A DNA stretch of 64,000 bases, taken from NCBI GenBank assembly GCA_000708835.1, contig DF237039.1:1-64000 (forward strand), in the 5' to 3' direction. Of this stretch, positions 29,578-54,600 are shown in pieces. The translations under genes were made by a program, and so were the position numbers. This stretch comes from Klebsormidium nitens. Its lineage: Eukaryota; Plantae; Klebsormidiophyceae. Position 1 is the stretch's first letter, and each line of letters begins with the position of its first letter. The notes under the pieces were generated by a model that saw nothing but the letters and a program-made list of their open reading frames with translations, was not told where the DNA came from and ran no database searches.

Positions 29578-32500
29578 TCACGTCACGTGAAGCGCCGCCT
29601 GGGAGTCTGCCTCAGAATCGTCTTCTGGCACAACTTGGTAAGCGGCGTCAGATGCCGGCGCAGGTCGCGAGGTGCGATGCAAGCCCGGTAGAGGCGCAGT
29701 GCCCCCTTCAGATTTCAACAACGCGGTGTGAACTTTTTGGGGGGCTCTACTTTTGCGTGGGAGCGCAATTTCCTGAGGAAGTCCTTTCAGCAAAATTCCA
29801 AAGCCCATGAGAATAAGCCCCAACACGTGTTTGCCCAGGAGGGGCTTCGTGAAGATGGCGTATGACAGCAGGATGCTGACTGCCTTGCGGAGGGTCGTCA
29901 CCTGCAAACAAGTTGAATTGCTTGCAGTCAGTAGGGACGCTCGTGGGCCCGGCAACAAAAGTTCAAAAAATCGTCGATCGATGGGGGCAGGCCCCAACGT
30001 TGACACTTTGAATCGTCCAAGAGGGTTTGCATTGATCTTTCTGCCAAAGGCGGGCCCCAGAATTATGACGGCGACGTCTTGTGTGAGGGCGTCGCCGCAT
30101 TTTCGAATGTTTGTCCTGACACATCTGCCTGGTTGGCAAATGACACGACGGTTGTGTCAAGACAAGATGATCTTGCGTACTGACTGCCTCTTTCAAACGG
30201 ATTGCTACCCTGAACTAGAGACGTCAGTCTGCTGATGTTTGAACGGTGACGTTTTGCTTCTGAAGGGTGCGATAAATATGGCCGTTTGTACAAGAAGCAC
30301 CGATGAGGATTATGCACCAAAAGGAAGAGTCAGAGTAAAGTCGAGTATAAGGATAAGGCCCACAACTTCGTAAAATGTTGCACGCAGATCACTGAGGTTT
30401 GACGAAGGTAAGACAACCGAGCATTCTTGTTCGTCAGTTGTGCCTTTGGAACGAAACATGCACGCAGGAGTGAACATACAAAGGGAAACGTGGGCCTGCG
30501 GTGTCCGGCCAGAGATCGTCAACGTATTTGAAAAGATAATTTCTTAAGACACCTCGGGACTCGCGGCGTAACATCGTAGTGTTCCCGCTCCAAACAGCAA
30601 GGAGGAAAAGTACAAACGAACTCCAAAGGACAGCAATACTTCTTCAAAGCTGCCCAGGAGTCAGGATTTTCGTGCTTTATACTGCGGTGTTTCACAACCC
30701 AAAGAGCGGGTTTGCAACCATGTCGACCCATTCGAAAGACGGAAGCCAAACCGCCAACAAGCAGGAAAACAAGTGATCTTAGCCCACCATTGCGGTGGTC
30801 CCCGCTCCAAATAACGCCACCATCGACAGGATGGCCAGCTGCCCAATGTATGTGGCAAACGCGTCGGCGATTAGGGCGGCATAAACGTAGGGGTGCGCCA
30901 GGCCTGCGCTCCAGGCCTTGGTCGCCTCGCCAGTCGCAACCATGGGCACCACCAGGAAGGGGATCCCCACGATCGTCGTACAGTAGAGCATCTCGGTCTG
31001 CAGGGAAGATGAGCGGTACGTGACTTTAAAGCAACCGTATTGATAGTCCGAGAGTATTGCACGATTTACCGATAGGAATTGTAGAGTGTGCTGAAGCTGC
31101 GTAAAGCTGAGCAAGAGCGGGGCGCCAGCAGGTGCGAGATACCCCAGACACTGCTCGAAAACGCTGCTTAGGTTTCCACGCATTGCCGTTGCTTCCGTCA
31201 CGATGCCCCTTGCTTTTCTGCAAGACGACACTCCGTCACGCGGTCACCCCCCACCCCGGAGCTGACCTCACCATGCTGACGTCATCATCCTTTTTCACTT
31301 CAGCTTAGCCTGCAGCAACCTCGCCTGAGGCGCGTGACAAAGTAGCGAAGGCTGCGATTGTTCGAGTACAATGAGACTTCTTAAGACAAATCTAAGCGGG
31401 TGGTACATCTTGCAAACACGTGTTTTCACCAGAAAACCTGGAAAGCCGCTCACTTGGGAGGTGCGCGGCGCGGTTGCGAAGATGGCCTCGGTGAAGTTGT
31501 TCATGAAGGCGTCAAGAACTAGAGCGGTGAGCACCATCACAACGCCGAGTGTGTGGAAGCGTGGGGAGGATGCAGCGTCGGCGAGCGTGAAGGCGATGAG
31601 GCCAAGCACTAGAGAGAGCGCGGCAACGTAGTCCTGGGGCAAATATGTGCGCTTGATCCCCGGGAGGCAGTTGCTGAGGAGCATCACGGGGATGACCTGT
31701 TCGGTGGAAAGAGGGCGAGTGATCGGAGGAAGGGAAGGTTGGTTCTTATGGGAAGAACGTATTGCAGAGTACGAGGAGACTCCGAGGTCGGGGAAAGAGG
31801 AAGTGCGCCTGGAGGCAAGGGCCCGCGTCAAGCGAAGTGGGTAATTTTTTTCGGGGCATGATCACTGCCAGAGTGGCACTCTCTGATCCAATAGAACAGG
31901 ACACTAACCAGCTGGTCGATAACCGGTGGTTTAAGCTGGTACGCTGGCAGATTCGACTCCCAACTTTTGCGGAGTCCGCATAGACTTGTTGTAGACTAGA
32001 AAGTTGATAGTACGGCGCATAAGCTATGCGCCAGGTCCGGACTATAAAAGGGCTGTCGCGGACGCGGTAATCATCCCATCCTTCATTCGTAATGTCTCGT
32101 ATCAATCCCGTTCCCACAGCTTCGAAAAAGTTTTTGCTTCCGCACGTAGTTGTACTGAAAACCACTTTGGTTGTAACAGGTACGTCTTCCTAGGTGGACC
32201 TCATTAATTAAGTTTCATGTACCGCGACCAGATCTCCTCGTGGTGCCAGAATAGCGGGTAGGTTCGACAATTTCATCACTTGACATCAGCTTTGCACAAC
32301 CTTTGCTCACCTTTGTGCTCTTGAACATGACTTGGGCGGGGTAGTTGAGGTAAGCGAGGGATCCCCTGGAAAGCCCCGTTGACGCCATGAGCATCCCAGC
32401 TATTTTGACGTAAGTCGTCCATGGGTTAACGCAGTCCTTGGGGCGAAATCCGTTCAGGGTCATGAGGAGGATGTAGACGAAGCTTTGGACGAGCGTGAAG

Positions 32501-33603
32501 TACCAGCCATAACTGCAAGCGGGTTAGCAGAGGAATAGGAGGGTTAGGAGAAGTTGAGAGGTCATCTGCGCTCTCAAAAAAGCAGCCGATTGATCAGGGT
32601 CGTGTAAAGAAAGAAACGAAGCAGCTTTGAATGTTTGGGGCTAAGCCTGCTGTAGCTACATTGGTTCAGCTGAGGGTCGAAGTGGGTTAGCAGGCGCTTT
32701 GGGAAAATGAGAGGGCGATTTTGCAAGGGTAAAAAACAGACATGCCTTTCTCAATTGTTGAAGTACGAGAGAAATGCAGTTGAAACGCTGCTCAAAGGGC
32801 AGGATTAATAAATCAGAGGGAAGACCTACAGAATGGGAAACGTGGACCCCTGAGAAGGGTCAGACCCTCCCTCAAAATAAAGATGCCCTCGAATAAAAAT
32901 TGTAACTGTGCAGGTTGCTTGGCAGGATTCGGAGCGATTGTTGTGATGGGACTTGGATTGAACTGACACATGGCCGAGTGTAATACAGCAATATATGCTT
33001 GCATAGGAGCTGCTCAGCAGAGGGCTCTCAACGCCCCCTGCCAGATAATTCCGATTTTCAGCACCGGAAAGGATCCTTCATCTATTTAAAGCGTGCGCTT
33101 GCCCGTTGACACAACTTAGACACCTCTTAGACAAAACCAACCTGAAAGAAACCCAACACAGTACGACTTCGAGGGGTCTTTTCAAGTTACAACAGTCCAA
33201 GGTAACCCAGACCTTATGGCCTGAAAGCAACTACTCGGAGCGAAGACGGCCACATTCCCATCAGTTCCGATCTGCCAGGTAAAGGGCAGAATACTCAGAG
33301 CTTCGACGTGGTCGCAGCACAGCTGTCCGTCCAAGCATACGGATCACTAGCGACATGTCAAACACGGAAAACTTGCACAAGATCCAAGAGAAATTCCATC
33401 TCTCATATCCAAGGGTTTCGCAACGAAACTTGCCTGAAACCCGCCCTGGCATAGACGAACTCCTCCGCTACCCCATCAATCAGGTACGCCACAAAGAACC
33501 CCCCCGTGCAGATCCCAAGCTGGGCCGCCTTTGAGCGCTTGCTCAGGTTGATTCCCAGGAAGATAACGTCGGCGGCCTGCCGAGCCTCACCCAAGCTCGG
33601 CAT
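29578..33603 (-). CDS. UTR4: UDP-galactose/PAPS transporter (UAA family, UTR2/UTR4 / SLC35B3-like), 382 aa
   Basis: Exons 33603-33434, 32512-32311, 31696-31454, 30997-30788 and 29901-29578. Motifs [29 protein letters not shown] and [20 protein letters not shown]. Intron 1 needs a GC donor (AG|gcaagt). The specific UTR paralogue is not resolved. Confidence 0.9.
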
Positions 33604-34593
33604 CCTCGATGCTGGCAGCTTGAGCGGGCGGCGCAAAGACTAGGCTGACCTCTAGCATGGTGCAAGCTCTAGGCGCGATCTATTTCAAACCACCACGGTA
33701 ATTGAAGCTGATCCGAATTGTGATTCGAGTGTGGCCTACAGCACCCCGCAGCTCACAGAGTGCTGAGGCTTGTACTAAGTCTAGAGCTGAAGAGGGAGCT
33801 TTGAATTGTGCTGAGCCCTCTTTGCTGCCCTAAGGAAATCCAATGAAAGAGGAAAAATACTTCTTTGCCTTCACATTCTGATCATGCTGAGAGGGTCGGG
33901 AGGTGGCGGTCACCTTCTTTCAGTAACCCAAGTCAATTGATTGCGGGCTTGTCATGCCCAATTGGGCATCCTTCACATTGTAGACTAGTGATCACGGCCC
34001 ATCTCAGGAATGTTTCAGGCATAAGTGCTACAATCTGCACCACGCGTGCTCTGTACCTGGAGGATCTTAAAGCAGAACGCTGCAGATTGCACCATGTGTT
34101 GCAGTAAGGAACTGCGCGCCAAAGAGCCTCAGGAAAGCGCCCCTTGCGAATTCTCCAGCGATAGGACGCCAAAAAGGAGGTTTTACGCAGAAGGCTCCCG
34201 AATGTCACATGACAATCGCCATTTTCTGCAGGATTCTTGCGCCGCAGATTGGAAGGAGGAGAGCTTTAGTGTGCAACTGAAAACTTGAACACCAACAGTC
34301 TTCTTGGAAAGAAAGCAGCCCTCACATTGCAACTAGCGATGGGCAGAAGGTGGGGTCTTGTCAGAACGGACGGCTGCAGGCTGTGCTGGTATCCACGTGT
34401 TACAGATCCTGCGGCGGAGGGAGTCCCTTGCAAGGGGGTCCCCCAACCACGCTCGCAGTCCGCCATGCAGGTTGAGAACCACATGGAAAAGACATGCAGA
34501 AGAAACCTGGAAGAGAGTAGTTAAAACTTATTTGTGAAGACCTCTTCAAACACAACAGGACCAAGCGTTGCGACTTTGCTTCCGCACTTCAAA

Positions 34594-38949: not shown

Positions 38950-41195
38950 GAAAAAAACGCACAAGAGCTTTGGTGCACCGACATGGTGTCATCTGCCACG
39001 TCTCAACGTAGCCGATGCAGCAGGGTAGCTTGCTCCCTGCGGGGTTTCCAATGAGGTGGCACTGCGCATCGTTTTGTTGTGTATGGGCTTCTCTACAGAA
39101 TTCGTCTTGGACAAGCTGGGATTGCAAGTCGCTAACTCTAGTCCTCCGCTCGTAACGATCCAGCCAAGCGCAGTCGCTTTGGAGTACAACGTGTGCCCAT
39201 GTGTTGTTCCCCCCGTGTGACGTCTTTCAGAGCTTTGACACACTGACACACAGACCGTTACAAGATTGTCGAGGATGGTTCCAAAGGAAGCGTCTAGAAG
39301 GGCATGCGTGTGTTTCGCCGCCTCCTGAATGGCAGTCGACGGTGACGATCAGTCAGGACGCTCGGCATCAACTTGCTAGCTTTCAAAATTCACACAGGTA
39401 CTGCATTACTGTCGAAACTCAGATGGATGAAATGCAACCTTCTGAGCGGTTTTATGTTGCAAACTAAACAACTGTACATGCTATATAGGGCACGAGATAG
39501 CATGGCACGGCGGCCCGGTGGTTGCACTGCACCCTATAGACGCAACTGTGAACTTAGCTAGTCTAGTTCAACAGGTAGACTGAGACTGGCCGGCAACGCA
39601 TGGGGCTGATCTACCGTTCTATCGATGTTCATAACCCTATGCATGTTAAAAACATGCAAGATTGCCGCGCAATGGCGCGCGGCTTCGACAGTGCGTCACA
39701 GCGCGCTTAGTCGAAAGCTGCACGAAGTATAGACATGAAGCATCATGAATTCGATCATTGGTACTCATGACCAGATTGAAAGGCGGAAATGTACTAGATC
39801 GATATGCTCAATCCCCGTATGTCGAAAGCATATGATCAATTAATATAATCCACATTCTCATGCATCATCCGTTTATTGCATCCGGCGTACTAATGTTACA
39901 TGAGAACAATCAGTCCCTGCTGTCCAAAATCGACAATATGATCTATTAAATGTGCCATATAAAGGCTGCGTCTTCCCATGGGCTCCGCCAATCCCAACGC
40001 GTCAAGTTTGAGGAACACAGTGACGGGGTAAGTTTGGATCGTACTTCAGGTTGGGACTGGCCAGCACATGATGCGCTAGGCTGGTTGCATATCTATCTCC
40101 AACGTGCTCACGACTCAAGCTAGTACTTCCAAGTTTGTTAACATTGTTACTTGAATATCAGTCGGAACGTTCGACTCCTGCCACGACTCATCAGTGGAGT
40201 AGGACAGGTTAAGAACGGCCTACTCTTACAATGTCAATTCACAAGCACATGCAGAATTCTGAAGGCAATATACTGACGGAGCGCTTCGATGAAACAATGA
40301 AAGATCGATGGAGAGTCAGAAGCTTGGATCATATGGTTCAAAAAAGGCCAATATCCACATGGCTGCCGTACATGTCCAAATTTGAAGGTCCAAGTCGGAT
40401 GTCTCATGCTTATTGCTCAAGAGGCAACGTTCTACGCTCGGTTTCTGTGCTCTTTAAAAATGGCGAAACATACAACAAACTCTCACACGCCCACACAACT
40501 GGCGCACTCTACTTGCCTTACAAGATTGTTTCTTTCTAGTTGGCACTTTCAAGTTGCAGACTTCTTTCTTGGGCCGAAGAAGCATTCAAAGGGTTTTGCA
40601 ACAGCTCCTCGGCTTGCTCAGGTCCAAAGGAGACGGTACTTTGGTTCTCGGACTGAAAAACCTGCAAAATACCTCGACTGTAAGTTGATAGTTGAGGAAG
40701 ACAGGAGCATGCGTACTTTCAAAACTTACTTTGTCAGTCAAAGGGAGTGAAGGTATCTTGCGGATCCGCGGCAATTGAATCTTATATCTCGCAGCTTTTA
40801 ACCGGGAAAAGGTACCAGAGGGCCAGTCAAACGATACAATACAGTCAACTAGATACCTGGACGCAAAATTCAGATCCCCATTGCGGAGCTGCTGGTCTTT
40901 TCAATAGTCGGCTGCAAACTGGCGCGGCAAGGGATGATGGACAGGCAGAGAACTCAAGTTCCAGAGCTCTCTCCGTGTTGGACTGGAGGAAATGTTGCGC
41001 CTTCCAATATTTTTTTAATGTATTACGGGCGGAAATGCTGGCGTGGTCTACAGACTGAAAGTCTGCAGCAACACAACACGGTTCTGCCTGCCAGATATTG
41101 TAATGTAAAACGGGCTGGTCATCTCGCACAAGTCAAAATGAGGGAATCTCACCCCCACGGAACACTCTGTCTTTATCCCGCACGGGGCCTGTCCT

Positions 41196-44100
41196 CTAAG
41201 CGTTGTTCAGGTAGCCGCCATAGGCTCCATTGGTACCAATGGGGAGCCCAGACGCCTGCGGAAAACAGGTGCGAAGAAATAGGTTAACATTACACAAGTC
41301 TCTGTGTCGAGCAGTATTGAGGTCCGCAAGCTGACCTCGAGGGACAAGCAGGGTCTCTAGGGCGACGTCCACTCAATCGCCAACGGCCTCAGCCCCTTAA
41401 CACTTAACTCCACGATCGACGCTAACACACTTCGTTCAAGTTCGATACGAGATTTGTGCAAGTAGCTTGCACAGGCAGCTTGCCAGACGTCGGACCGAGA
41501 CCTCCAACAAAACGCGCGCGTTGCGCGGGGCACCTTCTTGGCGGCCGCCATCTGCGCGAGGATGAGGCGCAGCGCGGCGTTGGTGGCGTCCGGCTTCTTA
41601 ACCTCCACGCTCAGGATCTTGTCCTCGATGGTCAGCGTGTGGTACACCCCCGGCGCCGCCAGGTAGCGGCCCCCAGGGATCGGCACGAGCTGGCCCTTGA
41701 GCATCTGCTCGGCCGCGTGCATCTGCGCTTCGCTCACTTTGCCGTTGTTGGTGAACTCGAGCGTATGCTCGGTGCTGACCCCCTGCGGGTTGATGGCCCT
41801 CACACCCATGTTCACGTGGGTCTGCCGGTACTGCAAAGGTGGTGCGAAACGAGGATTGGATTGAATGAGACGGAAAGCAAGCGCAAAGCGTCGAGCATGA
41901 AGGACTGGCGCTGTTCACAACTGAGGTTAGGATTGCCCAGAGATCTTCAATCAAGTAAGGTCTGGCGTGTTTTCAGAACCCAATCATAGGAGACGCCCCG
42001 GCCGTTTAGCGCACTGCCTAAGCAAACGAAGCGGGTGACGGTTTCAATCGCTCCAAGCAGGCAAGAGTGTGTTTTCAATGTATGAAATCACAGCCTGCTC
42101 GAAGGCCAAGATTCAAACGGAGGCACCAGCGCCAGCTCTCCATCATGACCTCTTTGCTACAAAGAATCACCTTCTGAAAGCCTTGATTTCGCTGCACGAG
42201 AAATCGAACTCGCAAAGCGACAGCCCAGAGTGGTTTGCATCCAGCTAAGAGTTGACCCACCTCATCGTCGATCCACTTGATGAGGGCGGCCCCCAGAATC
42301 TTCACGGCGAGCTTTATCACCACGAGCTCAACGATGACGGAAGGCTCCTTCACGTTCAGCGCTGGCTCGTAAGCAAACAGCTCCTCCAGCGTGTTGATCG
42401 CCCCCTGGGGCGGGCGTGCAGCCGCGAGCGCGAGCGGGATGCCCTGCAACACCACCGCCACGGGCGTCCATGTTTTGCTCGTGAAGTCAAAGGCGACGGC
42501 TGACGTGTGGCCGGGCTTGAGGACGATACTTGTGGACGCGGAGACGGAGAGGTCCTTAGCGACGATTCCGTCATTTCCGGTGTACTTCTTGCTGTTGGTG
42601 AAGTACACCTCGACTTCTTCGGCGAAGCTGAAGCCGGCCGTTCCGTTGAGCGGGATGCCCGACGCGATGACGGGGGCCTGCGTCGAAAGAGGGGGTCGAA
42701 GAGTGAGTCTTCCGCTAAAAGAAAGTGGGGAAATGGTCCAACTCTTCAGTGGGCTCGCTTATACGCCTTGTGGGGGCTTGCCACTCAGGGAGTATAATGC
42801 TCGCCAAAAGTTACTTTTTGGAACGAGAAGTGGCGGGGCAGGGCGTCAGAGGGAGCCTTCGAAGCCTCAGAAGCTTCCCTCAAATGAAAGAAAGGAGCGG
42901 GGCACGAGAAGTTTAAATGCCATCGTTCACCTCAATGGGGAAGAGAGAAGGGTCCGTGGGAGGGAGGAGTAATATCAGGAGGAAGGATCCCTGTAGGGTG
43001 AGCCGAACAACATGCAGAAGTCTTATGAAGGGGACCTGACTGTAGCTTAACGATTTCAGAAGTGATCTGCTATACATGCACTATTTCAGAATGTTGAGAA
43101 GTTTGGGTCACAAAGGAGTGCGGGCGTCCATTCATTCTGCCGGGAAGAGCTGGGCCTTTTTCGCGAGCAACCTTTGGCACTTCCTCGGAGCGATTCGAGT
43201 ACCAAAGTGGCCGGCACTCGGAGGCCGAAAGTCTGGGTTGCCTCTTGACGCATGTCTGATATACACCGAAGTCTTGAAATGCGCTTGCCTGAACGAGCTG
43301 TCCGTTCTTGGACACCTTCTGCGCGATGCCGTAGCGGTCGTTGCCGGGGCGCCAATCGTTTTCAATCTCAATGCCGTCGGGGCGGGAGGCGCTGCCAATC
43401 TCCCTGAAAACCCGGTTGTACGAGTACCTGCAAGTGATTACAAGCTTTTGTACCACACTTCCTGTTCTTCGTTTTCGACATCTCCTTATGCAGGATAGGC
43501 CTCTTCCAACCCTCGGCCTCTGATGCGACAAGCCTTATGCTCCGCAAGCATCGAGAATGAAGGAGAGATTCCTGTGGATTCGTTACAGACATCTCCCGAC
43601 TTCCTGAAGCTTGGCAAGGTCCTAGGGCTTATTTTGCCACGAACGAACGTACATGCGGCTTGACTGCTCGAGAAGCGGTACAATAGGGCCACCTCAAAAG
43701 CTGATCGTAGACACAAGAAAACCTTCCATGTATCTCAATTGACAGGGAAATCAGCTGGGCACTTCACAACACTCGTTAGAACCCTCAGCTCCACAATCTC
43801 CCTTACATTCCCGCTAGATTCGTCTTGCGCCAAAACCAAAGCATTTCAAAATGGAGCCAAAAACGGACAATTCCAAACGTTCCAATATATCCACCCCCCA
43901 GTTGTAACAGCAACAAAGGCAAGCACTGTCAACCAGCAGCCCGAGTTGAAAGAGCCAGAGCGTCAGGCCTATTTCGGACGCGCAACGTTCTTCTTGCCAA
44001 ATATAGATCCATCAAGTAGCCAAAGACCAATTGGAACAGAGGCAACAAGTGCAAAGCCTCTTCCTCTTAACGCCCTACTTATCTCGTGCCTGCTGCAGTT

Positions 44101-44463
44101 AAACTAAGACCCCAAGTACCGATCATAATACTAAAGCTACCCAGAAACCAAAGCCCTCGATTGTGTTCAGGGCCCCACTCACTTCCTGCCCATGGTCGCT
44201 TCAGGGGTGTTGCTCCCCTGCATGATGGTGACCCCGTCCTGGGACAGGTCCTGCGTCGTGTAGTACAGGTAGTAGTCCTCGTCCCAGCTCACGGTGATCG
44301 TTCCGCCCAGGATCTCCACGGACAGCCACTGCACCGGAATGGCGACAGCGGAATCGACGCCGCTCTTCTTCATGACGCCCAGCTCGTAGCCGCCGTTCAC
44401 CAGGGTGGTGACGTCAGCATCTTTGGGGATCTGGACCTGGAAGGAGTACTTTGCTGACGCCAT
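41196..44463 (-). CDS. Uncharacterised 397-aa protein, paralogue A of the inverted pair
   Basis: Exons 44463-44183, 43427-43289 (GC donor CAG|gcaagc), 42677-42261, 41830-41534 and 41255-41196. Intact frame. MASAKYSFQVQIPKDADVTTLVNGGYELGVMKK...GAYGGYLNNA*. Confidence 0.9.
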
Positions 44464-46808
44464 GCTTGAGAAGCGCACGGTTAGGAAGCTCGGAACGTCG
44501 GTAGACAGAGAGCTGAGGAGGGAGGAGTGCGGGGGGCTGCTGGACGCTTTCTGGAGGCAAGAGTCTTGTGTTTTGGAAAACGAGAATCTGCCAATGACCG
44601 TAAGGGCTTGCCTTTCTCACCCGAAATCAGCATGCTGGAAAGGAACGAGCGCCCGGCCTGTAGCTATAGCAGGCCTTGCTCAAAGCCGCTGCAGTAGCAC
44701 ATTCTGCTCTTACAGAAGAGCATTATGCGTGATCACTTAGGAAGGTTCTCAGGAACTTTCTGCGCCTGGCTTCGAAGTAAATGCCCAAGGACGCGTACAG
44801 CCCGTGAAGCTATCGGCCAGGCGAGTTGCATCATACACTTGCAACTTATGGAGCCTTATGGAAGCCATCACCGAATATCATCCAATTTTATCCTCTTTCA
44901 CCCCGAGCGATCGATTTTAACCAGCTGAAACCCTCGAATTTCTGTAAGAACTTCAGCTTATACAGCTTACGACGACTTCCACTCAACCAGCCACTACTAT
45001 GTTCCTACAGGTTAATGTACCGGATGTAGGTTCAATTCGGACTTCTAAGTTCCATGCAAACTGGTCGAGACCATAATGAAATGCTACGGTTAATACAGAA
45101 AACGATCACGAGCGTTCCTACCGACTTATGGTATTCTGGGTAAAGTCTGAAAATCTGGTGCTGAGAAACTTACAGGGATCCGGAGGGGGTACCGTACCAG
45201 ATCGAGGCCCCACAAAGTCCTGCAGTTGAGACGCTGACTCCTCAGAGCCTGAATATAGCTCCAGTTTCTTACAGCTTATCATACTATTCAAGAGAATATG
45301 CCATTGTGCTGTCACCGGCACTCACAGAGATTGTAGCACCATGCAGGCACCGCGCGAAGAATGTCCTTGTTGCCGGTAGTATCTACCGGACACAGAGGAC
45401 TTGCATTTCAATCCTGACTGACGGAGCCTGCTGAGACGGACGTCGCACTGGGGGTCGGGACTGCGCATGAGAGATCTCAAAGTCCAGCTGCATGAATGAA
45501 GTTGGAGGCATTGGGTTTACAGATGATGTGAAGGCGGTTGAGACAGGGTTAGCGCGGGTTAAGGTCAGCGGGGATTCAAATTTCAAAGTACAGTACTTGG
45601 GTACCGGTATGTCATGACTTATGACTCAGGATACCGTAACGGTATTACCTGTTTGAATCCTATGTATCGTTCGACGTCGATACTTGAGTCGCCCCTCTTC
45701 CGGACATTAATATGTGTATACCGGTACGCGAATGCATGATGGACATTGAGAATCAAATGCCGTCGTGACAGCGAAGCATTTAGTACTACAGTAACGGAGT
45801 ATCATGCATGGCATACCTACCTACCTTCGTACGGTACACTCTCCCCTACCTACGGTGTTACCGCGCCGGTCCCCGGAGTCCCCAAAACGCGGACAATCAT
45901 CTCCGGCAATTTCCCTGTGTGAATACCCTGGCCGTGGCCGCGACCATACCGGCCTGTATTACCTAATATGAAGCTGGCCGGTCGGTACCACAACTTCAAG
46001 CTCTTCGTCTCTCCTAGGTAGTCGACGGGGCGGCTGATTCCTGAACCTACAGTAGGTCCTACATGCCACATGGCATACGCTCAAGGTGAGACCAGACGAC
46101 CGTCAACAGTCACTCATGTAGCGTACGCGCGCGTGCAGCGTCACTGTGGCAGGTGCCCTGGTCCTGAGCTGGCAGCAATAAATGCTCGCTGCTGGTTGAG
46201 CGCCGTGCATTATACATGTCTACCTCTTTGCTTGTAACCAACAGCAGGGCACTGGTACATACGCAGCGCTGATGGGCTCGGACTTCGGTGCATCATAGAC
46301 GAGTTCCCCTCAAGCTGATCAGTAAATGCTCGAGATCAGTCGTCCTTTGACACGGACGATTTTCAGATACCTGAAAAGCATGACAATTCTGTCTGAGGAG
46401 TGCTTGATGACACAGCCTACAGGTCTCGCAACCTGCAAGTGCTTTAATTCTGTGTTTCAAACTTGGCACCTCGGTGAACTTTGGTGCATGTCTAACCAGG
46501 GTTTCAGCTGGCTAAAATCGATCGCTCGGGGTGAAAGAGGAACAAAAATGGATAATATTCAGTGACCGCTTCCATGAGACTCGAAGTGTACAGGTGTATG
46601 ATGCAACTCGCCTGGCCGATTCCCTCACAGGCTGTACGCGTCTTTGGGCATTTACTTCGAAGCCAGGCGCAGAACGTGCCTGAGAACCTTCCTATTCACG
46701 CATAATGCACTCAGGAGGGATTTCCGAAAGAGCAGATTGTCCTACTGCAGCGTCTTTGAGCAAGGCCTGCGGCAGGCACTCGTTCCCTTTCAGCATGCTG
46801 ATTTTGGG

Positions 46809-46815
46809 TATAAAA
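46809..46815 (+). promoter_or_regulatory. Probable TATA box of paralogue B
   Basis: TATAAAA 165 bp upstream of ATG 46974, followed by a pyrimidine-rich leader. Confidence 0.55.
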
Positions 46816-46973
46816 GGCAAGCCCTTGCCGTGAAACCTTCATTGGCAGATTCTCGCTTTCCAAAACACAAGACCTTTGCCTCCAGAAAGCGTCCAGCAGC
46901 CCCCCCGCACTCCTCCCTCCTCAGCTCCCTCTCCACCAACGTTCTTATCTCCCTCACCTTTCGCTTCTCAAAC

Positions 46974-49900
46974 ATGGCGTCAGCAAAGTACTCCTTCCAG
47001 GTCCAGATCCCCAACGATACTGACATCACCACCCTGGTGAACGGCGGCTACGAGCTGGGCGTCATGAAGAAGAGCGGCGTCGATTCCGCTGTCGCCATTC
47101 CGGTGCAGTGGCTGTCCGTGGAGATCCTGGGCGGAACGATCACCGTGAGCTGGGACGAGGACTACTACCTGTACTACACGACGCAGGACCTGTCCCAGGA
47201 CGGGGTCACCATCATGCAGGGGAGCAACACCCCTGAAGCGACCATGGGCAGGAAGTGAGTGGGAGAAGTCTGAACGAACCCGAGGGGTTCGGCTCTTTGG
47301 GTTACGTTTCATAACCAATGCTTGGGTTCTCAGGCGAACCATAATCAAGTAGGACATCAAGAGGGGCCTTTCGACTGGTCGGGTTTGGCCCTTGTTTGAA
47401 TCACTGATTGGCTTTCTGATGAGTTATTTCAAGCAGGATGAACGTGCGTGGGGGTTCCAGGAAAACTTGATGTTTTGGCCACCTTCATTTCGCCTTCTGA
47501 AGGTGCTTGCCCGTGCTTGCATTTGTTGCTGTATACAAATCTAATAGAGCCTGATCACTTTTGGTTAAGTCAACAGATTTGGGCTCATCCGCTTTGTCTG
47601 TTTGAAATGGTGCTTTCCTTTGGGCACCAGTGAGATGATCTATTACGATCTTAGGCAGAAGGTGAATAGCGCTGAGAGGTTTGGCAAGTCTCATGGTTTG
47701 CAGTTGTTACTCTGTCAGGGCAGGTTTGATTAAAAGGTTAGCTAGAGTCTGTTTGCAGTTTCTGAGGCGGCGCATTCTTTGCCTTCTCAAGCATTGAAGC
47801 TGCACCTTTGCTAGACTAGCGCCCGGATGTAGGTATTGTGATTTCCCAAAACTTGCCATGTTATATCAAGGAAGTCGGAAGACTGAAAAAGGATGAAATC
47901 AAGGGAGACTGAAAAGAGTAGTAAAGCACACAAAGAAATTCCTTCATTCTCGTTGCTTGCAGCAAGCTGAAGGGTGGAAAGATTCTACACCAGAATTCTG
48001 CAGAAAATAAGATCGAAAAGAAGAACCGGGGAATCACATTGGAACGATGTGTGATCGATTTGCAGGTACTCGTACAACCGGGTCTTCACGGACATTGGCA
48101 GCGCCTCCCGCTCCGATGGTATTGAGATTGAGAACGATCTGCGCCCCGGCAGCGACAGCTACGGCATCGCGCAGAAGGTGTCCAAGAACAACGGAAAGAT
48201 CGTTCAGGCAAGTGGAGGTTCCGTGGTTGCTTAGAGGACTGCAGGGTACAAACATTATTACCATAACTCTCTATTACCCTCGCTTCATTTCGCTACCGGT
48301 TCAAGGGAGGACTGATTCTTCTGCTCTTGACGCTCCGACCCACCCCTTCCATTGTCGTTCCAGGGGATTCATTTCGGTTACAATCTTCCTATCTGGGCAG
48401 GCTTCTATCAGAGCGTCCTGCGTAACAAGCGAGCGCACTGAGGAGCTGAACCATTCTCTCCCTCTCTTGAGTGGAATCCAGACTCACTCTTCGACCCCCT
48501 CTTCTGCAGGCCCCCATCATCGCGTCCGGCATCCTTTTTAAGGGCACGGCCGGCTTCAGCTTCGCCGAAGAAGTTGAGGTGTACTTCACCAACAGCAAGA
48601 AGTACACCGGAAATGACGGAATCGTCGCCAAGTACCTCTCCGTCTCCGCGTCCACAAGTATCGTCCTCAAGCCCGGCCACACGTCAGCCGTCGCCTTTGA
48701 CGTCAGCGGCGGAGCCTGGACGAGCGTGGAGCCGATGGTGCAGGGCATCCCGCTCGCGCTCGCGGCTGCACGCCCGCCCCAGGGGGCGATCAACACGCTG
48801 GAGGAGCTGTTTGCTTACGAGCCAGCGCTGAACGTGAAGGAGCCTTCCGTCATCGTTGAGCTCGTGGTGATAAAGCTCGCCGTGAAGATTCTGGGGGCCG
48901 CGCTCGTCAAGTGGATCCACGATAAGGTGGGTTACTGATAGCCAGGATGCTAATCATTCTGAGGTGCTTGCTTTGCGAGGTTCGATTTCCGTCGGAAAGC
49001 TTTCAGAAGGTGATTCTTTGTTGCAAAGAGGTCAAAATGAAGAGCTGGCGCTGGTGCCTCCGTTTGAATCTTGGCCTTCGAGCAGGCTGTGGTTTCATAC
49101 ATTGTAGAACACACTCTTGCATGCTTGGAGCGACTCGATTGTTACCTGCTTCGTTTGCTCAGCGCAGTGCGCTGAACGGCCGGGGCGTGTCCTACAATCC
49201 GGTCCGAAAGCACGCCAGACCTTCTTATTTGAGGATGTCTGAGCAGTCCTGACCTCAGCTGCTAACAGCGCCGGTCCTTTGTGCCAATCAGAGGGGATGT
49301 GGGGTCAAGATTGTCGGCGGCTCGACCCTTTGCGCTTGCTTTCCGTTTCATAGTTGCTCTATCTTTGATCTAATCCTCATTTCGCACCACCCTTTGCAGT
49401 ACCGGCCGACCCACATGAACCTCGGTGTGAGGGCCATCAACCCGCTGGAGTCCAGCACCGAGCACATGCTCGAGTTCACCAACAACGGCAACATAAGCGT
49501 CCCGCAGATGCACGCGGCCGAGCAGAGCCTCAAAGGCCAGCTCGTGCCGATCCCTGGGGGCCGCTACCTGGCGGCGCCGGGGGTGTACCACACGCTGACC
49601 ATCGAGGACAAGATCCTGAGCGTGGAGGTTAAGAAGCCGGACGCCACCGTCGCCGCGCTGCGCCTCATCCTCGCGCAGATGGCGGCCGCCAAGAAGGTGC
49701 GCGCTCTGCGCGCGCGTTTCTTGTGGAGCTCTGGCAACCTGCTTGATTGTTGTTCTGGTCGTCACAAACAGAACGAAGTGGGCATCACCCATCTCGACAG
49801 AAGCGGAATGAGTCCGTTGCAATCGATTGAACCTCGTCCCGGAGACTGTGACTTTTCCTTTACGATCAGTTTGATGTACGTACTATTCATCGTAGCTGGA

Positions 49901-50010
49901 CACAAAATGGTCTTAAAGAAGCTCCTCATGTTACTAAATGCATCTATCTTCTGCAGGCCTCTGGGCTCCCCGTTGGTAACAATGGAGCCTATGGCGGCTA
50001 CCTGAACTAG
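46974..50010 (+). CDS. Uncharacterised 396-aa protein, paralogue B of the inverted pair
   Basis: Exons 46974-47254, 48066-48207 (GC donor CAG|gcaagt), 48510-48926, 49400-49696 and 49957-50010. Same exon structure as paralogue A. MASAKYSFQVQIPNDTDITTLVNGG...GAYGGYLN*. Confidence 0.9.
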
Positions 50011-51689
50011 AAGAGAAGCCCTATACGGAGTAAGACGAAGTGGCCTGGAGGTGAGATTCCTCACACCTTGGCAGTTTGTGTCACATGACCGGCCCCCATC
50101 GATCGGTATCACAATGTTCAGCTCGCACAGAAAACCTCGTTTTCCTTGATTTTGAAATGATCGAACTTCAGGAACTGCAAACTTTCTGGTTATCCCTCAT
50201 CTCATTTCAGAGCCGGCTACTGACTTGAGTACAGCAGTCCATCGTTCTGCCAAATGGTACGGCACTGATTCCTGGGTTGAATTATCAGTGACAGTATTTT
50301 GCTCGTCCAATTGGCCCCTTCCGATGCCTCTTCTCCTGTCAAAAGCTTAGACGTCAAAGACTACGCTACCGCGAGTTGAGTACATTCGTTAGCATTCAAT
50401 AAGAAGAACACATCTTATCCTCACATCGACACTAGCTTCTTATGACTGAGGTCCTTTTGCAGGTCTTTCTATCCAAGGATCAAAGGACCAGGAAGCTCCG
50501 CATGCCGAGGAGCTGCTGTAGACGAGGTGCAGATGCTCAGTCGGCCAAATTTATATTAGTCTAACAACCTGGAGTGCCAATCAAAGAGGAACAGGTTTGT
50601 AGATTCTAAGAGTGGATTTTGTGTGTGAGAGAGATTGTCATTAGACTCGTTTAGTCCGCCCCGATAGAGTGGTACAAACTGCAAAACAGCACCTGTTTCC
50701 GCAGTAGTAGACTCTGACCTGACCAACGTATGTGTGGTATCCTTTGTAGTAGTAGTAGACTAAGCTAAGATAAGGCTTGTTTGTCGTATGTTATAAGAGT
50801 GGTGATATGCGAGTGCATGTAGAGTCATATTGGAGAACAATCCGCCTCAGAATAGAACTCGAGACTTATCCCAAATGAGCACCTTTCCGCAGTATAGTGG
50901 ACATTCGGACTTTACCACGTTGAACTTGGACATATGTATGTACAGTTCAATCCCTTAGGTTTCTTGAACTTCTGGCTGAGTTTTCAATCACATATATCAG
51001 ACAGCTAGTACTTCGACCATTCCGACGATCATACATGTCTCCTTAGCCGGGTACCGCGGCGGCCTTCATCGGGCCGGCCACCGGTATAGTCAACGTCTCT
51101 GGAATGCGGTAATTCCATCTCTTGTGAATACATGATGTGAGTACGTCCCGATCGGCGATCTGGAACATATTTTTGAAACGTGCACCCGCACAATCGCAGA
51201 AATGATGAACAATCAGTAGGAGGTGTGAAACCCTCTCCTCTTCGAGATTCTATAACTGACTCCGGGTAGAAGCCTATAAGTGGGCCGGACACAACAAAAG
51301 GAAAACGAGCCTATATCGTTCATGTACGTAAAGTTGCAGTGGTGAACCATGCAGGCGCGCATGTTACTCACTATATGACTAATGCACTAAGCCAGCATTC
51401 CTTGCCAGGTCAGTCGCTGAAGATGATTGCGCATCATAAACTATCCCTTGCATCTATTGTACTTGTGAATCCGATCTGTAACAGAACTTCAAAGTTGCCG
51501 CCCATCCGAGCAAAGAAGTTGGGGTACATGTAGAGGTCCTTAAGGATAGTTAGCACTGTAACATGCGAGTAGAAGAATCACCAAACGCGAACCAGCAATG
51601 CATACTCTGACTGTCAACACGTATCTCTTCAACTTCCATTCATCCATAGTCTTGACTGTCCTCAACTTTTTAGAATCGCGACGACGTGG

Positions 51690-54600
51690 CTACTCTTGCA
51701 GGCGCCAGCTGGCAGCCTGCAAGCTCGTCTGCAAGTCCGCGATCTCTCTATCCAACGCCGCCATCCCTTTCTGCAGCTCTTCTGATCCTGCCGCTGCGGC
51801 GGCCCCCTTCCAAACCCCAGTATCGGACTCGCTTTCTCGTCTACCTAACTCACCGTTTTCGCCCATTAACCCACCGTCGTTTTGTAGCGTAACCCCTTCG
51901 TTTCGGTCTCGATCGCCCACTACTTTGTTACTTATTGGCTGCGCATATGCAGCCGCTGTTGCCTCTAACCCCCGGCTCGGCCACTGCCCGGCCGGCAGCG
52001 ACTGACTGACCGGGGAAACGCCTGAACGATTCCCCGCTTTTAGGGAACCGCCGTTAATCTTTCCTAACAGATCTCGTTCACTTTCCGTTTCTGTCAGCAG
52101 AAGGTCGTCCAGCAACCCCTCGGCGAGAATACCCCCGTTCGGCTTCCCGGAGGAGGCCTTCGCTTCACTAAGCCGATTATTCACACCGTTCCACTCCTCT
52201 GGTTTAGAAGAAACCCCCACACTACTGGGCCCTAAACCATGGCCTTTTCTCAACCCTCCCGCTTCCGGAGGAAGGCTGTCCCCGTCCCTTCCTTCAATGA
52301 CAGGGCCCCCAATTTTGTGAAAGTCCGTATGCCCAAACCCGCTCGGCATCACCCCCGCTGGCAGTAAACCGTTGCCCTCGTTATTGCGATTCTCTGTGCC
52401 TAACCCACCCTTAACCCCAACCGCTCTGTACCCGTCTACCTCCACTTCATTACCCTCTCTTCTTAAGCCACGCTCGAAACCCGGATTGGGAGCGCTCCCG
52501 TCATACCCGCCCGGCCTTGCCCCCTGCTCGTCTCGTCTTAACCCGTGCTGATGGCTCGGGTTAGGCACGCTCGCATAACCCTCGTCTCGACCCGTTTTCC
52601 TGTCTCCCCTCCTGCGACTTCTGTGATATCGATGCCGTTCCCTACCCTTTCCCGCAAACTCCGACGAGCGCTCCCCACTCGAAGTCCAGTCCAAACCCGC
52701 CCCTAACCCGTTCTCGAACCCGTTTCCCGCCTGCCCGTTCCCGTTAACCGCGTGCTCATTTAACCAGGTTTGGCTCCGCCCCAAAGTTTCGTGTACAGCA
52801 GACGCTGTGGCTGGCCGGGGGGAGGTGGTTTCCAGCGTTGAATGTTGGGGGGGGAAGAAGAAGATCTTCGGACGCTTGGACACAATCTCAAGCGCGAACT
52901 GGGCGTCCGCGCGCTGGTCCGCAATGAGCGCGCGGAGGTCCCGGATCGTCCGACTGTGCTGCTTGCAACGCTGCTCGAGTTCGCCCGACCGAACCTGCGG
53001 TCAGAAGAGCTGGTTTCAGGCAGCAGTACAGACTCTTTAGGTGATGTCATTTCCGTGAGTTCGGCCCCCTGCGGCAAGTTTGAAGTCTTACTGATGGTGG
53101 TAGAACGGCCCACCATAAGTTCGAGACAGTTGTCGATCACGAAAAAAAGACGCTTGTGCCATCAGCCGATACAAATCTAACTGTGGGACCTAGTCAATTG
53201 AAGGCTCTTCCCATGAGACTTCAGGCCGATCACGCTAGCAAAAATTACATGTCGCATATTGTTCGAAGTAACGTCGTGCGAAGACACAGCGCGTCTCACC
53301 AGCAGCGCTTCCCTCTCTTTCGTCCACCGCTCTGCGTCCGCCTCCAACCGCGCCAGCCGTTTCCGCAGGACTTGCAGGTCCGCCTCTAGTTGCTGCCGGG
53401 CTGCAGCCGCCTCACTCAGCGCGCGCGCGCTCTGGAGGGCCTCCCTCTGCTGCTCCACTTCCTGGGCGCTGGAACTGTACGAAAGAAAAACACCATTTCT
53501 CGATTTGACGTCGGCGATAAAGTCGCACTTTCGAAGGAGACTTTGACGTAAGACTGCGCCCCCAAGTCTGTGAACCTCTTTTCGCACTTTTTCCCAAGCA
53601 TCACTGTCCCCAAATCGTTTTTGGAGTCAACTCCCATCAATTGACATCAGCGATGAAGCCACCATTTTTGAACGAGACTTTGACGGAAGACTGCGTCCCC
53701 GAGTTGTAAACCCCATTTTCGCTCTTTCTCCCCAGCATTACTGTCACCAAGTCGATAAAGAAAACAAATCCAAAGCAACCGGTTCCGTACAAAGCAGGGC
53801 ACGTAGAGCATCCAACGCAAAACCCCACCTTTTCCGCAGTCTCTTCTGCAGGCCTTCCGCTTCTTCCGAAATACTGTATATTGTATCACTGACACCAATC
53901 TAGGAAAATCACATCCAAACCAAGAACAACCGTACTGATATATAGAATGCAGTGTAACGAACACCTGCGGACCCTCACCTTTCTCGCAGCGCCTTTTGCA
54001 GGCCTTCCACTCGTTCCCGAGGTACGTCATGTGAACAACACTGATTCAGAATGACACACCCAAACGAACCGAATCGTAACAAAAGAAGCCGAGCAGAGCA
54101 GAATCCCTGCCGATCTTCACCTTTCACGCAGCGCCTTTTGCAGGCCTTCCACTCGTTTCCGAGATCACCGTACGTTACGTTGCTTAAAAAACACTGATTC
54201 AGAAAGACACACCCAAACGAACGAAATCGTGACAAAAGAAGCCGAGCGGACGAGAAACGCCTGCGGATCTTTACCGTTCCCGTAGCACCTTTTGCGCGCT
54301 TTCCACTTCTTCCCGAGATCACCGTACGTCGTAATCAGGATGACACCCACAGACCAACCAGACGGTTAAAAGAGAGCAGAAATGCCTGCGGCTCCCCGCC
54401 TATTCCACAGCGCCTTTTGCAGGATTTCCAATTCTTTCCCGAATCTCCGTGTGACGTAATCAGGATGTCACACCCAAATAAACCAGATTGTCACAAAACA
54501 AGCCGAGCCGAGGAACCAACGCCTGCGGCTCTTCACGTTTCCCGCAGCACCTTTTGCGCGCTTTCCACTCGTTCTCGAGATCACCGTACGTCAATGAACA

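What the first reader, a model, noticed from the sequence alone, without database searches (positions are those of the whole stretch)
41050..50120. 9-kb head-to-head palindrome with two intact paralogues of an unrecognised gene
Two 5-exon genes with the same intron positions are transcribed outward from a ~1.55 kb unique spacer, and their upstream regions are also duplicated. Both frames are intact, with strongly GC3-biased codons. The locus interrupts a run of conserved housekeeping genes and looks like an accessory, selectively maintained module.
Basis: seen in the sequence. Interest (0 to 1): 0.75.

Follow-up and report, generated by a model that had tools for sequence, protein, structure and literature searches.

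The report
Old inverted gene pair, RhiA-like proteins
A green alga (Klebsormidium nitens) carries two back-to-back mirror copies of a little-known gene; both copies are intact, parts of them look repeatedly copied onto each other, and their protein probably resembles a bacterial small-molecule-binding protein, which makes this a solid but fairly ordinary case of gene duplication.

Summary
Window 41205-44934 and 46498-50007 are inverted copies around a unique 1563-nt spacer, and weak homology reaches 40475 and 50638. Each arm carries one intact 5-exon gene with identical intron positions, transcribed outward. These are Klebsormidium nitens KFL_000900060 (- strand) and KFL_000900070 (+ strand), with GC3 0.86-0.87.

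The arms are a mosaic. Exon 1 is 98.9% identical, the other exons 91-94%, the promoter region 88% and intron 3 84%. Introns 1, 2 and 4 and the 3' flank are only about 60% identical, but the homology is real and colinear. Inside the exons, identical runs of 114-229 nt alternate with dense clusters of differences. I read this as an old inverted duplication partly homogenised by arm-to-arm gene conversion. No frameshift occurs in 1.19 kb of coding sequence, so both copies are constrained.

The protein has no match in the local Pfam or NCBIfam, or in PDB sequences. Its N-terminal 220-residue beta-sandwich belongs to an unnamed family: bacterial single-domain forms and probable eukaryotic two-domain forms. 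That family is a probable distant relative of rhizobial RhiA and the Pectobacterium PSMB metabolite binders. The C-terminal domain is ferredoxin-like.

The "housekeeping run" claim is not supported. An assembly artefact is unlikely, and function remains inferred.

The parts
40475..41204 (-). Outer extension of the left arm (3' flank of the left gene): old, weakly homologous part of the duplication
   Evidence: 60% identity, colinear with 50168-50638; 65 bits against 20 or less in controls
41205..44934 (-). Left arm with clear similarity; carries KFL_000900060 (P0002)
44183..44463 (-). Left gene exon 1 (ATG at 44463; ends in phase 2; GTGAGT donor)
   Evidence: 98.9% identical to the right exon 1, with 0 synonymous differences
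43289..43427 (-). Left gene exon 2 (my model, GC-AG donor GCAAGC; the annotated model runs on to a GT donor and adds a mini-exon at 42928-42990)
   Evidence: arm similarity stops right after the GCAAG
42261..42677 (-). Left gene exon 3 (417 nt)
41534..41830 (-). Left gene exon 4 (297 nt)
41196..41255 (-). Left gene exon 5 with stop codon (two codons longer than the right copy)
44464..44934 (-). Left copy of the duplicated 5' region (5'UTR and promoter); TGAGAAAG at 44612-44619 where the right copy has a TATA box
   Evidence: 88% identity, sharp inner breakpoint
44935..46497 (.). Unique spacer between the arms: no internal symmetry, no repeats, no RNA family, no protein family
46498..46973 (+). 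Right copy of the duplicated 5' region; TATAAAAG at 46809-46816, about 160 nt before the ATG
46498..50007 (+). Right arm with clear similarity; carries KFL_000900070 (P0001)
46974..47254 (+). Right gene exon 1; nt 53-281 (47026-47254) form a 229-nt run identical to the left copy
48066..48207 (+). Right gene exon 2 (GC-AG donor GCAAGT in my model; the annotated model ends at 48222)
48510..48926 (+). Right gene exon 3; contains the 163-nt identical run 48739-48901
48702..48738 (+). Hyper-divergent patch in exon 3 (16 differences in 37 nt; residues 211-223 of P0001; left counterpart 42449-42485)
   Evidence: pN 0.46 against pS 0.16
48927..49399 (+). Right intron 3, unusually similar to the left intron 3 (84%; a 109-nt block at 94%)
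49400..49696 (+). Right gene exon 4; 114-nt identical run 49535-49648
49957..50010 (+). Right gene exon 5 with stop codon
50008..50638 (+). Outer extension of the right arm (3' flank), weakly homologous to 40475-41195

Best explanation
This is an old local inverted (head-to-head) duplication of one gene, promoter included, in Klebsormidium nitens. The two copies have not drifted apart evenly. Introns 1, 2 and 4 and the 3' flanks keep the old divergence of about 40%. The promoter region, the exons and intron 3 are 84-99% identical and contain long perfectly identical runs. The most likely cause is repeated short-tract gene conversion between the two arms (inferred), on top of purifying selection on both coding frames (shown by the absence of frameshifts). 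Short patches, above all residues 211-223, escaped homogenisation or are kept different.

Each gene encodes a protein of about 396-401 residues without a signal peptide. It has an N-terminal all-beta sandwich of about 220 residues, a conserved linker, and a C-terminal ferredoxin-like alpha/beta domain. The N-domain belongs to an unnamed family that is probably a distant relative of RhiA/PSMB. By analogy with PSMB1a, the likeliest role is binding or sequestering small hydrophobic or phenolic molecules in the cytosol. This role is inferred and has low confidence. The two paralogues may differ in specificity at the divergent patch, which is speculative.
For: Structure of the repeat.

Gene models and identity with KFL_000900060 and KFL_000900070.

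Mosaic divergence: E1 98.9%, E2-E5 91-94%, upstream 88%, I3 84%, and I1, I2, I4 and the flank about 57-60%. The heterogeneity is highly significant: E1 against upstream P=3e-9, I3 against I1 P=2e-18. The weak intron and flank homology is real, at 71 and 65 bits against 21 or less in controls.

Differences are clustered, with identical runs of 229, 163 and 114 nt (permutation P 0.025, <5e-5 and 2.5e-4).

Constraint on both copies: 2 in-frame indels against about 23 gap openings expected. dN is about 0.07, against intron-3 divergence of about 0.16-0.18.

Orthologue fragments P0003-P0006 are equidistant from both paralogues and end at the same exon borders.

Protein: 37 relatives with E<=1e-3. 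AlphaFold models have pLDDT 78 and 94.5. The C-domain is ferredoxin-like, Z up to 8.1.

RhiA link:
- The Atlas structure match of the bacterial relative P0021 to clusters carrying PF27136 RhiA_N gives TM 0.74-0.79.
- hhalign of the family against a profile of 8 RhiA homologues gives Prob 74.7%, E 2.6e-5 and 157 colinear columns.
- Controls score 18.9 or less against 38.8.
- PSMB1a binds solanidine and salicylic acid (PMC13490719).
- RhiA is an abundant cytoplasmic protein (PMC2275737).
Against: Gene conversion is inferred from two sequences only. No outgroup DNA could be fetched, so selective constraint on the promoter and intron 3 cannot be excluded as the cause of their similarity.

Overall dN/dS between the copies is 0.95. 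Taken at face value this suggests weak protein constraint. I attribute it to suppressed synonymous change (GC3 0.87) and to the mix of converted tracts and old patches.

The RhiA link is remote:
- The eukaryote-type subset alone gives Prob 19%, E 1.2e-3.
- HMM-to-sequence scores are 16 bits or less.
- No solved structure matches the N-domain above Z 6.7.

No expression data were available. Non-coding GC content gives no clear sign of GC-biased conversion.
Confidence: 0.65

Rival explanations
1. The duplication is recent, with about 7-15% divergence. Introns 1, 2 and 4 and the 3' flanks were scrambled afterwards by rapid indel or insertion turnover. No gene conversion took place.
For: Exons, upstream region and intron 3 all lie in a 7-16% band. 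Intron lengths differ between the arms: I2 is 302 against 611 nt and I1 is 811 against 755 nt.
Against: Intron 1 and the 3' flank align colinearly over 500-570 columns at about 60% identity. That is point divergence, not replacement. Exon 3 holds a 37-nt patch with 43% divergence next to a 163-nt identical run. Exon 1 has 0 synonymous changes while the adjacent promoter is 12% diverged. No intron segment is repeated elsewhere in the window, so there is no sign of a transposon insertion.
Confidence: 0.12
2. The similar non-coding parts (476-nt upstream region, intron 3) and the exons are kept alike by purifying selection alone, after an old duplication. The constraints would be promoter or enhancer function, an intronic regulatory element, and codon usage. 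There would be no sequence exchange between the arms.
For: The upstream similarity starts at a sharp boundary and covers a plausible promoter and 5'UTR. GC3 of 0.87 means that synonymous sites are constrained.
Against: Selection would have to hold 473 nt of intron at 84%. It would also have to hold runs of 114-229 nt fully identical, including all synonymous sites. Meanwhile dN in neighbouring patches reaches 0.14-0.46. Intron 3 matches no RNA family.
Confidence: 0.13
3. Assembly artefact: one gene, or two alleles or haplotypes, was wrongly joined as an inverted pair.
For: None from the sequence.
Against: The arms differ by 1-40% depending on the segment, and intron lengths differ. The breakpoints against a unique 1.56-kb spacer are sharp. 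Two distinct annotated proteins exist in public databases. The vegetative stage of Klebsormidium is haploid, which is established knowledge and was not tested here.
Confidence: 0.04
4. The 10-kb unit is a foldback-type or long-TIR mobile element, or its remnant, that carries the gene as a passenger.
For: It has long inverted arms around a unique centre. The same genome holds large unusual DNA transposons, according to unchecked earlier scan notes.
Against: The spacer ORFs give no transposase or any other protein family. Only two copies of the gene are found in K. nitens. The arms are not repeated elsewhere in the window. The arm ends fade gradually, so no terminal repeats or target-site duplications can be defined.
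Confidence: 0.04
5. The N-domain is not RhiA-like. It is a generic carbohydrate-binding or adhesin-type beta-sandwich (CBM41/26/25, transthyretin-like or pilin CnaB-like), so the protein would bind a polysaccharide or cell-wall component.
For: The best structural neighbours are transthyretin, CBM41, CBM26 and pilin domains, at Z 5.7-6.7 with about 80-95 aligned residues (also 2j71).
Against: These matches cover less than half of the 209-residue domain and lie in the range the tool calls common arrangements. There is no signal peptide for a wall-directed protein (by eye). The profile comparison with RhiA is colinear over 157 columns and well above controls.
Confidence: 0.15

Closest known systems
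RhiA (Rhizobium leguminosarum/johnstonii rhiABC operon) and the PSMB family of Pectobacterium (RhiA homologues; Pfam 38.1 PF27136 RhiA_N)
   Same: Both are all-beta sandwiches of about 200-230 residues without a signal peptide. The profile-profile alignment is colinear over about 157-160 columns, with shared motif order: a W...W-E-x-Y block, then a G-S-x-x-I-N block, then an F-T-P block. A bacterial relative of the algal protein matches RhiA_N-bearing clusters structurally at TM 0.74-0.79. In Pectobacterium parvum the family also occurs as a cluster of paralogues, a four-gene island (PMC13490719).
   Different: Sequence similarity is at the detection limit. The algal and other probable eukaryotic members carry an extra C-terminal ferredoxin-like domain that is unrelated to RhiB or RhiC. 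The gene has four spliceosomal introns and host-like GC3-rich codons. There is no quorum-sensing operon context. Ligand binding was not tested.
Palindromes with arm-to-arm gene conversion (for example the ampliconic palindromes of primate Y chromosomes; from general knowledge, not tested here)
   Same: Both have inverted arms around a unique spacer, genes inside the arms, and arm similarity kept up by intrachromosomal conversion.
   Different: This one is tiny, with arms of about 4 kb against tens to hundreds of kb. Arm identity is a mosaic of 60-99% rather than above 99.9% throughout. Conversion seems confined to short tracts centred on the exons, the promoter and one intron.
Divergently transcribed paralogue or partner pairs with a shared bidirectional promoter (for example histone gene pairs; general knowledge)
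   Same: Two genes lie head to head and are transcribed outward.
   Different: Here each copy brought its own duplicated promoter region of about 475 nt. The two promoters are separated by 1.56 kb of unique DNA, so no shared promoter is implied. The right copy has a TATAAAAG box that the left copy lacks.

Membership tests
Inverted segmental duplication (palindrome) with gene conversion between arms | Two homologous arms in inverted orientation around a non-duplicated spacer | tested here: met
   Arms 40475/41205-44934 and 46498-50007/50638; unique spacer of 1563 nt
Inverted segmental duplication (palindrome) with gene conversion between arms | Divergence between the arms is heterogeneous, with long identical tracts next to old diverged segments | tested here: met
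   Segment identities run from 57% to 98.9%. Fisher tests give P from 1e-5 to 2e-18. Identical runs of 114-229 nt have permutation P from 0.025 to <5e-5.
Inverted segmental duplication (palindrome) with gene conversion between arms | Outgroup phylogeny shows that the paralogues share derived states in the converted tracts only | tested here: inconclusive
   Only protein fragments of relatives were available. They are equidistant from both copies. No orthologous DNA could be fetched.
RhiA / PSMB (PF27136 RhiA_N) | Match to the Pfam RhiA_N model above its threshold | not testable with these tools
   The local Pfam copy lacks the model, since bona fide RhiA itself gets 0 families. NCBIfam has no RhiA model either.
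RhiA / PSMB (PF27136 RhiA_N) | Profile-level sequence homology to RhiA homologues | tested here: inconclusive
   Whole family against the RhiA profile: Prob 74.7%, E 2.6e-5, with controls far lower. Eukaryote-type subset: Prob 19%, E 1.2e-3, same register. HMM-to-sequence scores are 16 bits or less.
RhiA / PSMB (PF27136 RhiA_N) | All-beta sandwich of about 200-230 residues, cytoplasmic (no signal peptide) | tested here: met
   The models show 14-17 strands and one short helix in residues 1-224 and 1-209. The N-terminus has no hydrophobic leader (by eye). RhiA is cytoplasmic (PMC2275737).
RhiA / PSMB (PF27136 RhiA_N) | Structural superposition with RhiA or PSMB models | tested here: inconclusive
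   The evidence is indirect only. The Atlas model of the bacterial relative P0021 matches clusters in which 10-22% of members carry RhiA_N, at TM 0.74-0.79. No RhiA model was available to superpose on the algal model.
RhiA / PSMB (PF27136 RhiA_N) | Binds plant secondary metabolites or other small ligands | not testable with these tools
   This needs biochemistry. It is known only for PSMB1a (PMC13490719).
PixA/AidA inclusion-body proteins (PF12306), a lead from memory | Match to the Pfam model or to a solved AidA-type structure | tested here: not met
   The Pfam scans listed no PF12306 match: P0001-P0003 at E up to 10 and the 38 family members at E up to 1. The structure searches listed no such chain.
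Foldback or long-TIR transposable element | Transposase or other mobility gene, multiple genomic copies, defined termini with target-site duplication | tested here: not met
   The spacer ORFs have no protein family. Only two gene copies were found in K. nitens. The termini fade gradually. The whole genome could not be searched.

The most novel reading that the evidence does not exclude
The pair would be a eukaryotic offshoot of the bacterial RhiA/PSMB small-molecule binders. A terrestrial streptophyte alga, or its ancestor, would have acquired it from soil microbes, and it would then have fused to a ferredoxin-like domain. It would be kept as a two-gene palindrome in which gene conversion homogenises the scaffold. 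Diversifying selection would hold a 13-residue patch (residues 211-223) different, giving the two proteins different ligand specificities for chemical defence or tolerance on land.
Probability: 0.12. Interest if true: 0.6.

Novelty: new member of a known kind. Interest (0 to 1): 0.35.

Why it matters
The finding matters in three modest ways.

1. It gives a compact, well-delimited natural example of patchwork concerted evolution. Old (about 40%) and young (0-1%) divergence sit side by side within a few hundred bases. With orthologous loci, conversion tract lengths in a streptophyte alga could be measured.

2. It ties two "hypothetical proteins" of Klebsormidium, and an unnamed family of metatranscriptome and bacterial proteins, to the RhiA/PSMB family. 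That family only recently received a biochemical function (binding of plant secondary metabolites). This yields a testable hypothesis for an orphan gene in a lineage used to study the move of plants onto land.

3. It corrects details of the public gene models, which are asymmetric at the exon 2/3 boundary.

None of this changes a general principle. Inverted duplicates with gene conversion are common.

Tried and rejected
Searches that gave nothing:
- Pfam on single exons and on the full proteins, and on all 38 family members.
- NCBIfam.
- PDB by sequence and by profile.
- Foldseek against PDB for both models.
- VIA-align wide gave only generic ferredoxin-like matches (Z up to 8.1) and beta-sandwich matches (Z up to 6.7).
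- Word-based protein searches with the alignment A1 and with P0012 found no named relatives.
- Cluster look-ups gave almost no names. The exceptions were a Myxococcaceae MAG and a Homalodisca assembly record.

Fetching orthologous DNA failed:
- Metagenome scans with P0005 and P0012 found nothing.
- Alignments A1 and A3 were too divergent for the search for related loci.

Ideas tested and dropped:
- Bacterial context of a relative (L001) was uninformative: SDR, sigma-54 activator and GH3 genes.
- RhiB or RhiC as the source of the C-domain: no similarity.
- A PixA/AidA link recalled from memory: not supported.
- GC-biased conversion: non-coding GC content shows no clear signal.
- Rfam, tRNA and tandem-repeat scans of the locus were empty.
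- The bacterial promoter/terminator scan is irrelevant for a eukaryote.
- Papers: no hit for the gene identifiers, and the single paper holding both RhiA and Klebsormidium mentions each once and is unrelated.

Exons were searched by reference. The full-length queries were the database proteins P0001 and P0002, which the exon-4 search returned.
Full report
**1. Observation.**
A repeat search over 38-53 kb finds 12 inverted pairs and no direct ones. blastn of the left arm against the reverse complement of the right arm gives blocks of 87-93% identity with E down to 0. Clear similarity covers 41205-44934 and 46498-50007, separated by 1563 nt of unique sequence (44935-46497). The inner breakpoints are sharp: similarity starts abruptly at 44934 and 46498. 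With relaxed scoring, weak but colinear homology continues outward to 40475 and 50638. It is about 60% identical over 514 columns and scores 65 bits, against 20 or less for reversed controls. The ancestral duplicated unit was therefore about 4.1-4.5 kb, and the whole structure is about 10.2 kb.

**2. Organism and genes.**
Reading both arms gives two 5-exon genes transcribed outward.
- Right gene (+): 46974-47254, 48066-48207, 48510-48926, 49400-49696, 49957-50010.
- Left gene (-): 44463-44183, 43427-43289, 42677-42261, 41830-41534, 41255-41196.

Intron positions and phases are identical, and the splice sites are canonical. The exception is a shared GC-AG donor at intron 2 in my model.

An exon-4 query by reference returned the public proteins KFL_000900070 (P0001, 401 aa) and KFL_000900060 (P0002, 425 aa) of Klebsormidium nitens, on a 214-kb scaffold. 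tblastn places them exactly on these exons. The public models differ from each other at the exon 2/3 boundary: they use different GT donors, and the left model has an extra 21-residue mini-exon. The arm similarity stops exactly after the shared GCAAG, which favours the symmetric GC-AG model. RNA evidence is needed to decide.

GC3 is 0.87 and 0.86, the highest among open frames in the window.

**3. Mosaic divergence.** Identity by segment:

| Segment | Identity |
|---|---|
| Upstream 476 nt | 88% |
| Exon 1 | 98.9% |
| Exon 2 | 90.6% |
| Exon 3 | 92.8% |
| Exon 4 | 92.9% |
| Exon 5 | 94% |
| Intron 3 | 84% |
| Intron 1 | 59% |
| Intron 2 | 57% |
| Intron 4 | 60% |
| 3' flank | 56-60% |

- The low-identity segments are still truly homologous. 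Intron 1 aligns colinearly over 574 columns at 71 bits, against 21 or less for reversed, shuffled or unrelated sequence.
- The heterogeneity is not sampling noise. E1 against upstream gives P=3e-9, E1 against the other exons P=1.5e-5, and I3 against I1 P=2e-18.
- Inside the exons the differences are clustered. Exon 3 has 16 differences within 37 nt, followed by a 163-nt identical run (P<5e-5). Exon 4 has a 114-nt identical run (P=2.5e-4). Exon 1 has a 229-nt identical run (P=0.025).
- The dense patch in exon 3 (residues 211-223) is as diverged as the old introns and mostly non-synonymous, with pN 0.46 against pS 0.16.

The simplest reading is an old duplication with neutral divergence of about 40% uncorrected. 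Exons, promoter and intron 3 were later overwritten in short tracts by gene conversion between the arms, leaving a few unconverted or selected patches.

Selection alone would have to keep every synonymous site identical across 114-229 nt. It would also have to hold 473 nt of intron at 84%. A recent duplication would need extreme point divergence in three introns. I rank both below conversion but cannot exclude them without outgroup DNA.

**4. Both copies are constrained.**
The alignable non-coding parts show 17 gap openings in about 874 aligned sites. The 1188 coding columns show two, both in frame, where about 23 are expected (P about 3e-8). Nei-Gojobori dN/dS between the copies is 0.95 overall, with dS 0.064 and dN 0.061. 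This does not mean neutrality. Synonymous sites are held by the strong GC3 bias, and dN is less than half the divergence of intron 3. The estimate also mixes converted tracts with old patches.

Fragments of orthologues from other Klebsormidium-like sources (P0003-P0006, 55-73% identical) are equidistant from both paralogues. They break off where the K. nitens exons end, which suggests conserved intron positions.

**5. The protein.**
There was no match in the local Pfam, in NCBIfam or in PDB sequences. The exhaustive HMMER search found 37 proteins with E<=1e-3. They fall into three groups:
- Klebsormidium-like fragments.
- Two-domain proteins of about 300-350 residues, each on a 1.0-1.5-kb contig of its own. 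These are probably eukaryotic transcripts. The Atlas points to a partly ascomycete cluster, which is a lead only.
- Single-domain proteins of about 205-250 residues. At least one is bacterial, from a Myxococcaceae MAG (locus L001), and another is unannotated on a Rhizobium rhizoryzae plasmid.

AlphaFold2 with the family alignment predicts four regions for P0001:
- an all-beta N-domain (residues 1-224, pLDDT about 90);
- a low-confidence linker (225-259) that is nevertheless identical in the two paralogues;
- a beta-alpha-beta C-domain (260-388);
- a Gly/Asn/Tyr-rich tail.

A single-domain relative folds with pLDDT 94.5. Structure searches give only generic neighbours. The C-domain resembles RRM, SEA and ferredoxin-like folds (Z up to 8.1). 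The N-domain resembles transthyretin, CBM and pilin sandwiches (Z up to 6.7, covering less than half the domain). Foldseek finds nothing.

**6. Link to RhiA.**
The Atlas places the bacterial relative P0021 next to clusters in which 10-22% of members carry PF27136 RhiA_N, with TM 0.74-0.79. I fetched RhiA from pRL10 of R. johnstonii 3841 and seven diverse homologues from plasmids, and built a profile from them.

- hhalign of the family N-domain profile against this profile gives Prob 74.7%, E 2.6e-5 and 157 colinear columns. Reversed and block-shuffled controls reach at most score 18.9, against 38.8.
- The eukaryote-type subset alone gives the same register but weaker numbers: Prob 19%, E 1.2e-3.
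- HMM-to-sequence scores are marginal.
- The local Pfam and NCBIfam libraries do not recognise RhiA itself. Their silence on the algal protein is therefore no test.

I rate distant homology to RhiA/PSMB at roughly 60-65%. RhiA is an abundant cytoplasmic protein of unknown function (PMC2275737). A 2026 paper reports that a Pectobacterium homologue, PSMB1a, binds solanidine (Kd about 0.1 uM) and salicylic acid (about 9 uM). The same paper reports that the family forms a four-paralogue island (PMC13490719). By analogy, the algal proteins may bind small molecules. This is inference only. The C-domain is unrelated to RhiB or RhiC.

**7. Surroundings.**
The spacer has no symmetry, repeats, RNA family or protein family. 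To the left, a UAA-type nucleotide-sugar transporter lies on the - strand at about 30.8-33.6 kb. Further left are a weak Stc1-domain ORF and a weak STIG1-like ORF. To the right, a 436-codon open frame (51693-53000, - strand) and coiled-coil-like frames have no family. I cannot confirm that the locus interrupts a run of housekeeping genes.

The right copy has a TATAAAAG box at 46809-46816. The left copy has TGAGAAAG at the same place, which hints that the two copies are regulated differently.

**8. Limits.**
No orthologous locus could be examined.
- No reads or expression data were available.
- Earlier scan notes named the organism, which I confirmed independently. They held nothing on this locus.

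**Verdict.**
The palindrome is real and both paralogues are intact. The best explanation is an old inverted duplication with patchwork gene conversion. The protein is a probable distant, two-domain eukaryotic relative of RhiA/PSMB. This is interesting as a clean example and as a functional lead, but it is not a new kind of system.

Noticed in passing
window 30782-33639, - strand: Exons of a UAA-family nucleotide-sugar transporter gene (Pfam PF08449, E 2.9e-13 and 4.5e-5). It is the only clearly recognisable conserved gene near the palindrome.
   Followed up: partly
window 25762-26985 (+) and 16911-17630 (-): A 408-codon ORF with a weak Stc1-domain match (E 1.2e-5), and an ORF with a weak STIG1-like cysteine-rich match (E 4.4e-4).
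   Followed up: no
window 51693-53000, - strand: A 436-codon open frame right of the palindrome with no Pfam family. Coiled-coil-like frames follow at 54.8-57.1 kb on the same strand.
   Followed up: no
window 42928-42990 and 43265-43288 (left gene); 48208-48222 (right gene): The public models of the two paralogues are asymmetric. KFL_000900060 has an extra 21-residue mini-exon and a longer exon 2, and KFL_000900070 has a 15-nt longer exon 2. A GC-AG donor shared by both copies would make the models symmetric.
   Followed up: partly
window 46809-46816 against 44612-44619: The right copy has TATAAAAG about 160 nt upstream of its ATG. The left copy has TGAGAAAG at the homologous place. This may mean the two copies are regulated differently.
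   Followed up: no
window 48996-49104 against 42076-42184 (inside intron 3): A 109-nt block that is 94% identical between the arms, higher than the rest of intron 3. It has no Rfam match and no convincing open frame.
   Followed up: partly
L003 4992-5612 (Rhizobium rhizoryzae plasmid NZ_CP049249.1, 975911-976513): An ORF of 207 residues, 36% identical to the Myxococcaceae family member P0021. It has no listed annotation in the PLSDB table, which lists only one feature for this record.
   Followed up: partly
L004 10683-11270 (pRL10 of R. johnstonii 3841): The gene between rhiA and rhiC, historically rhiB, is annotated in RefSeq as 'tail fiber protein'.
   Followed up: no
P0010 (Homalodisca vitripennis assembly, KAG8289739.1): A 475-residue insect-assembly protein matches residues 41-98 of the algal protein in six stretches. 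It may be a repeat of the conserved W...W-E-x-Y block, or a contaminant contig.
   Followed up: no
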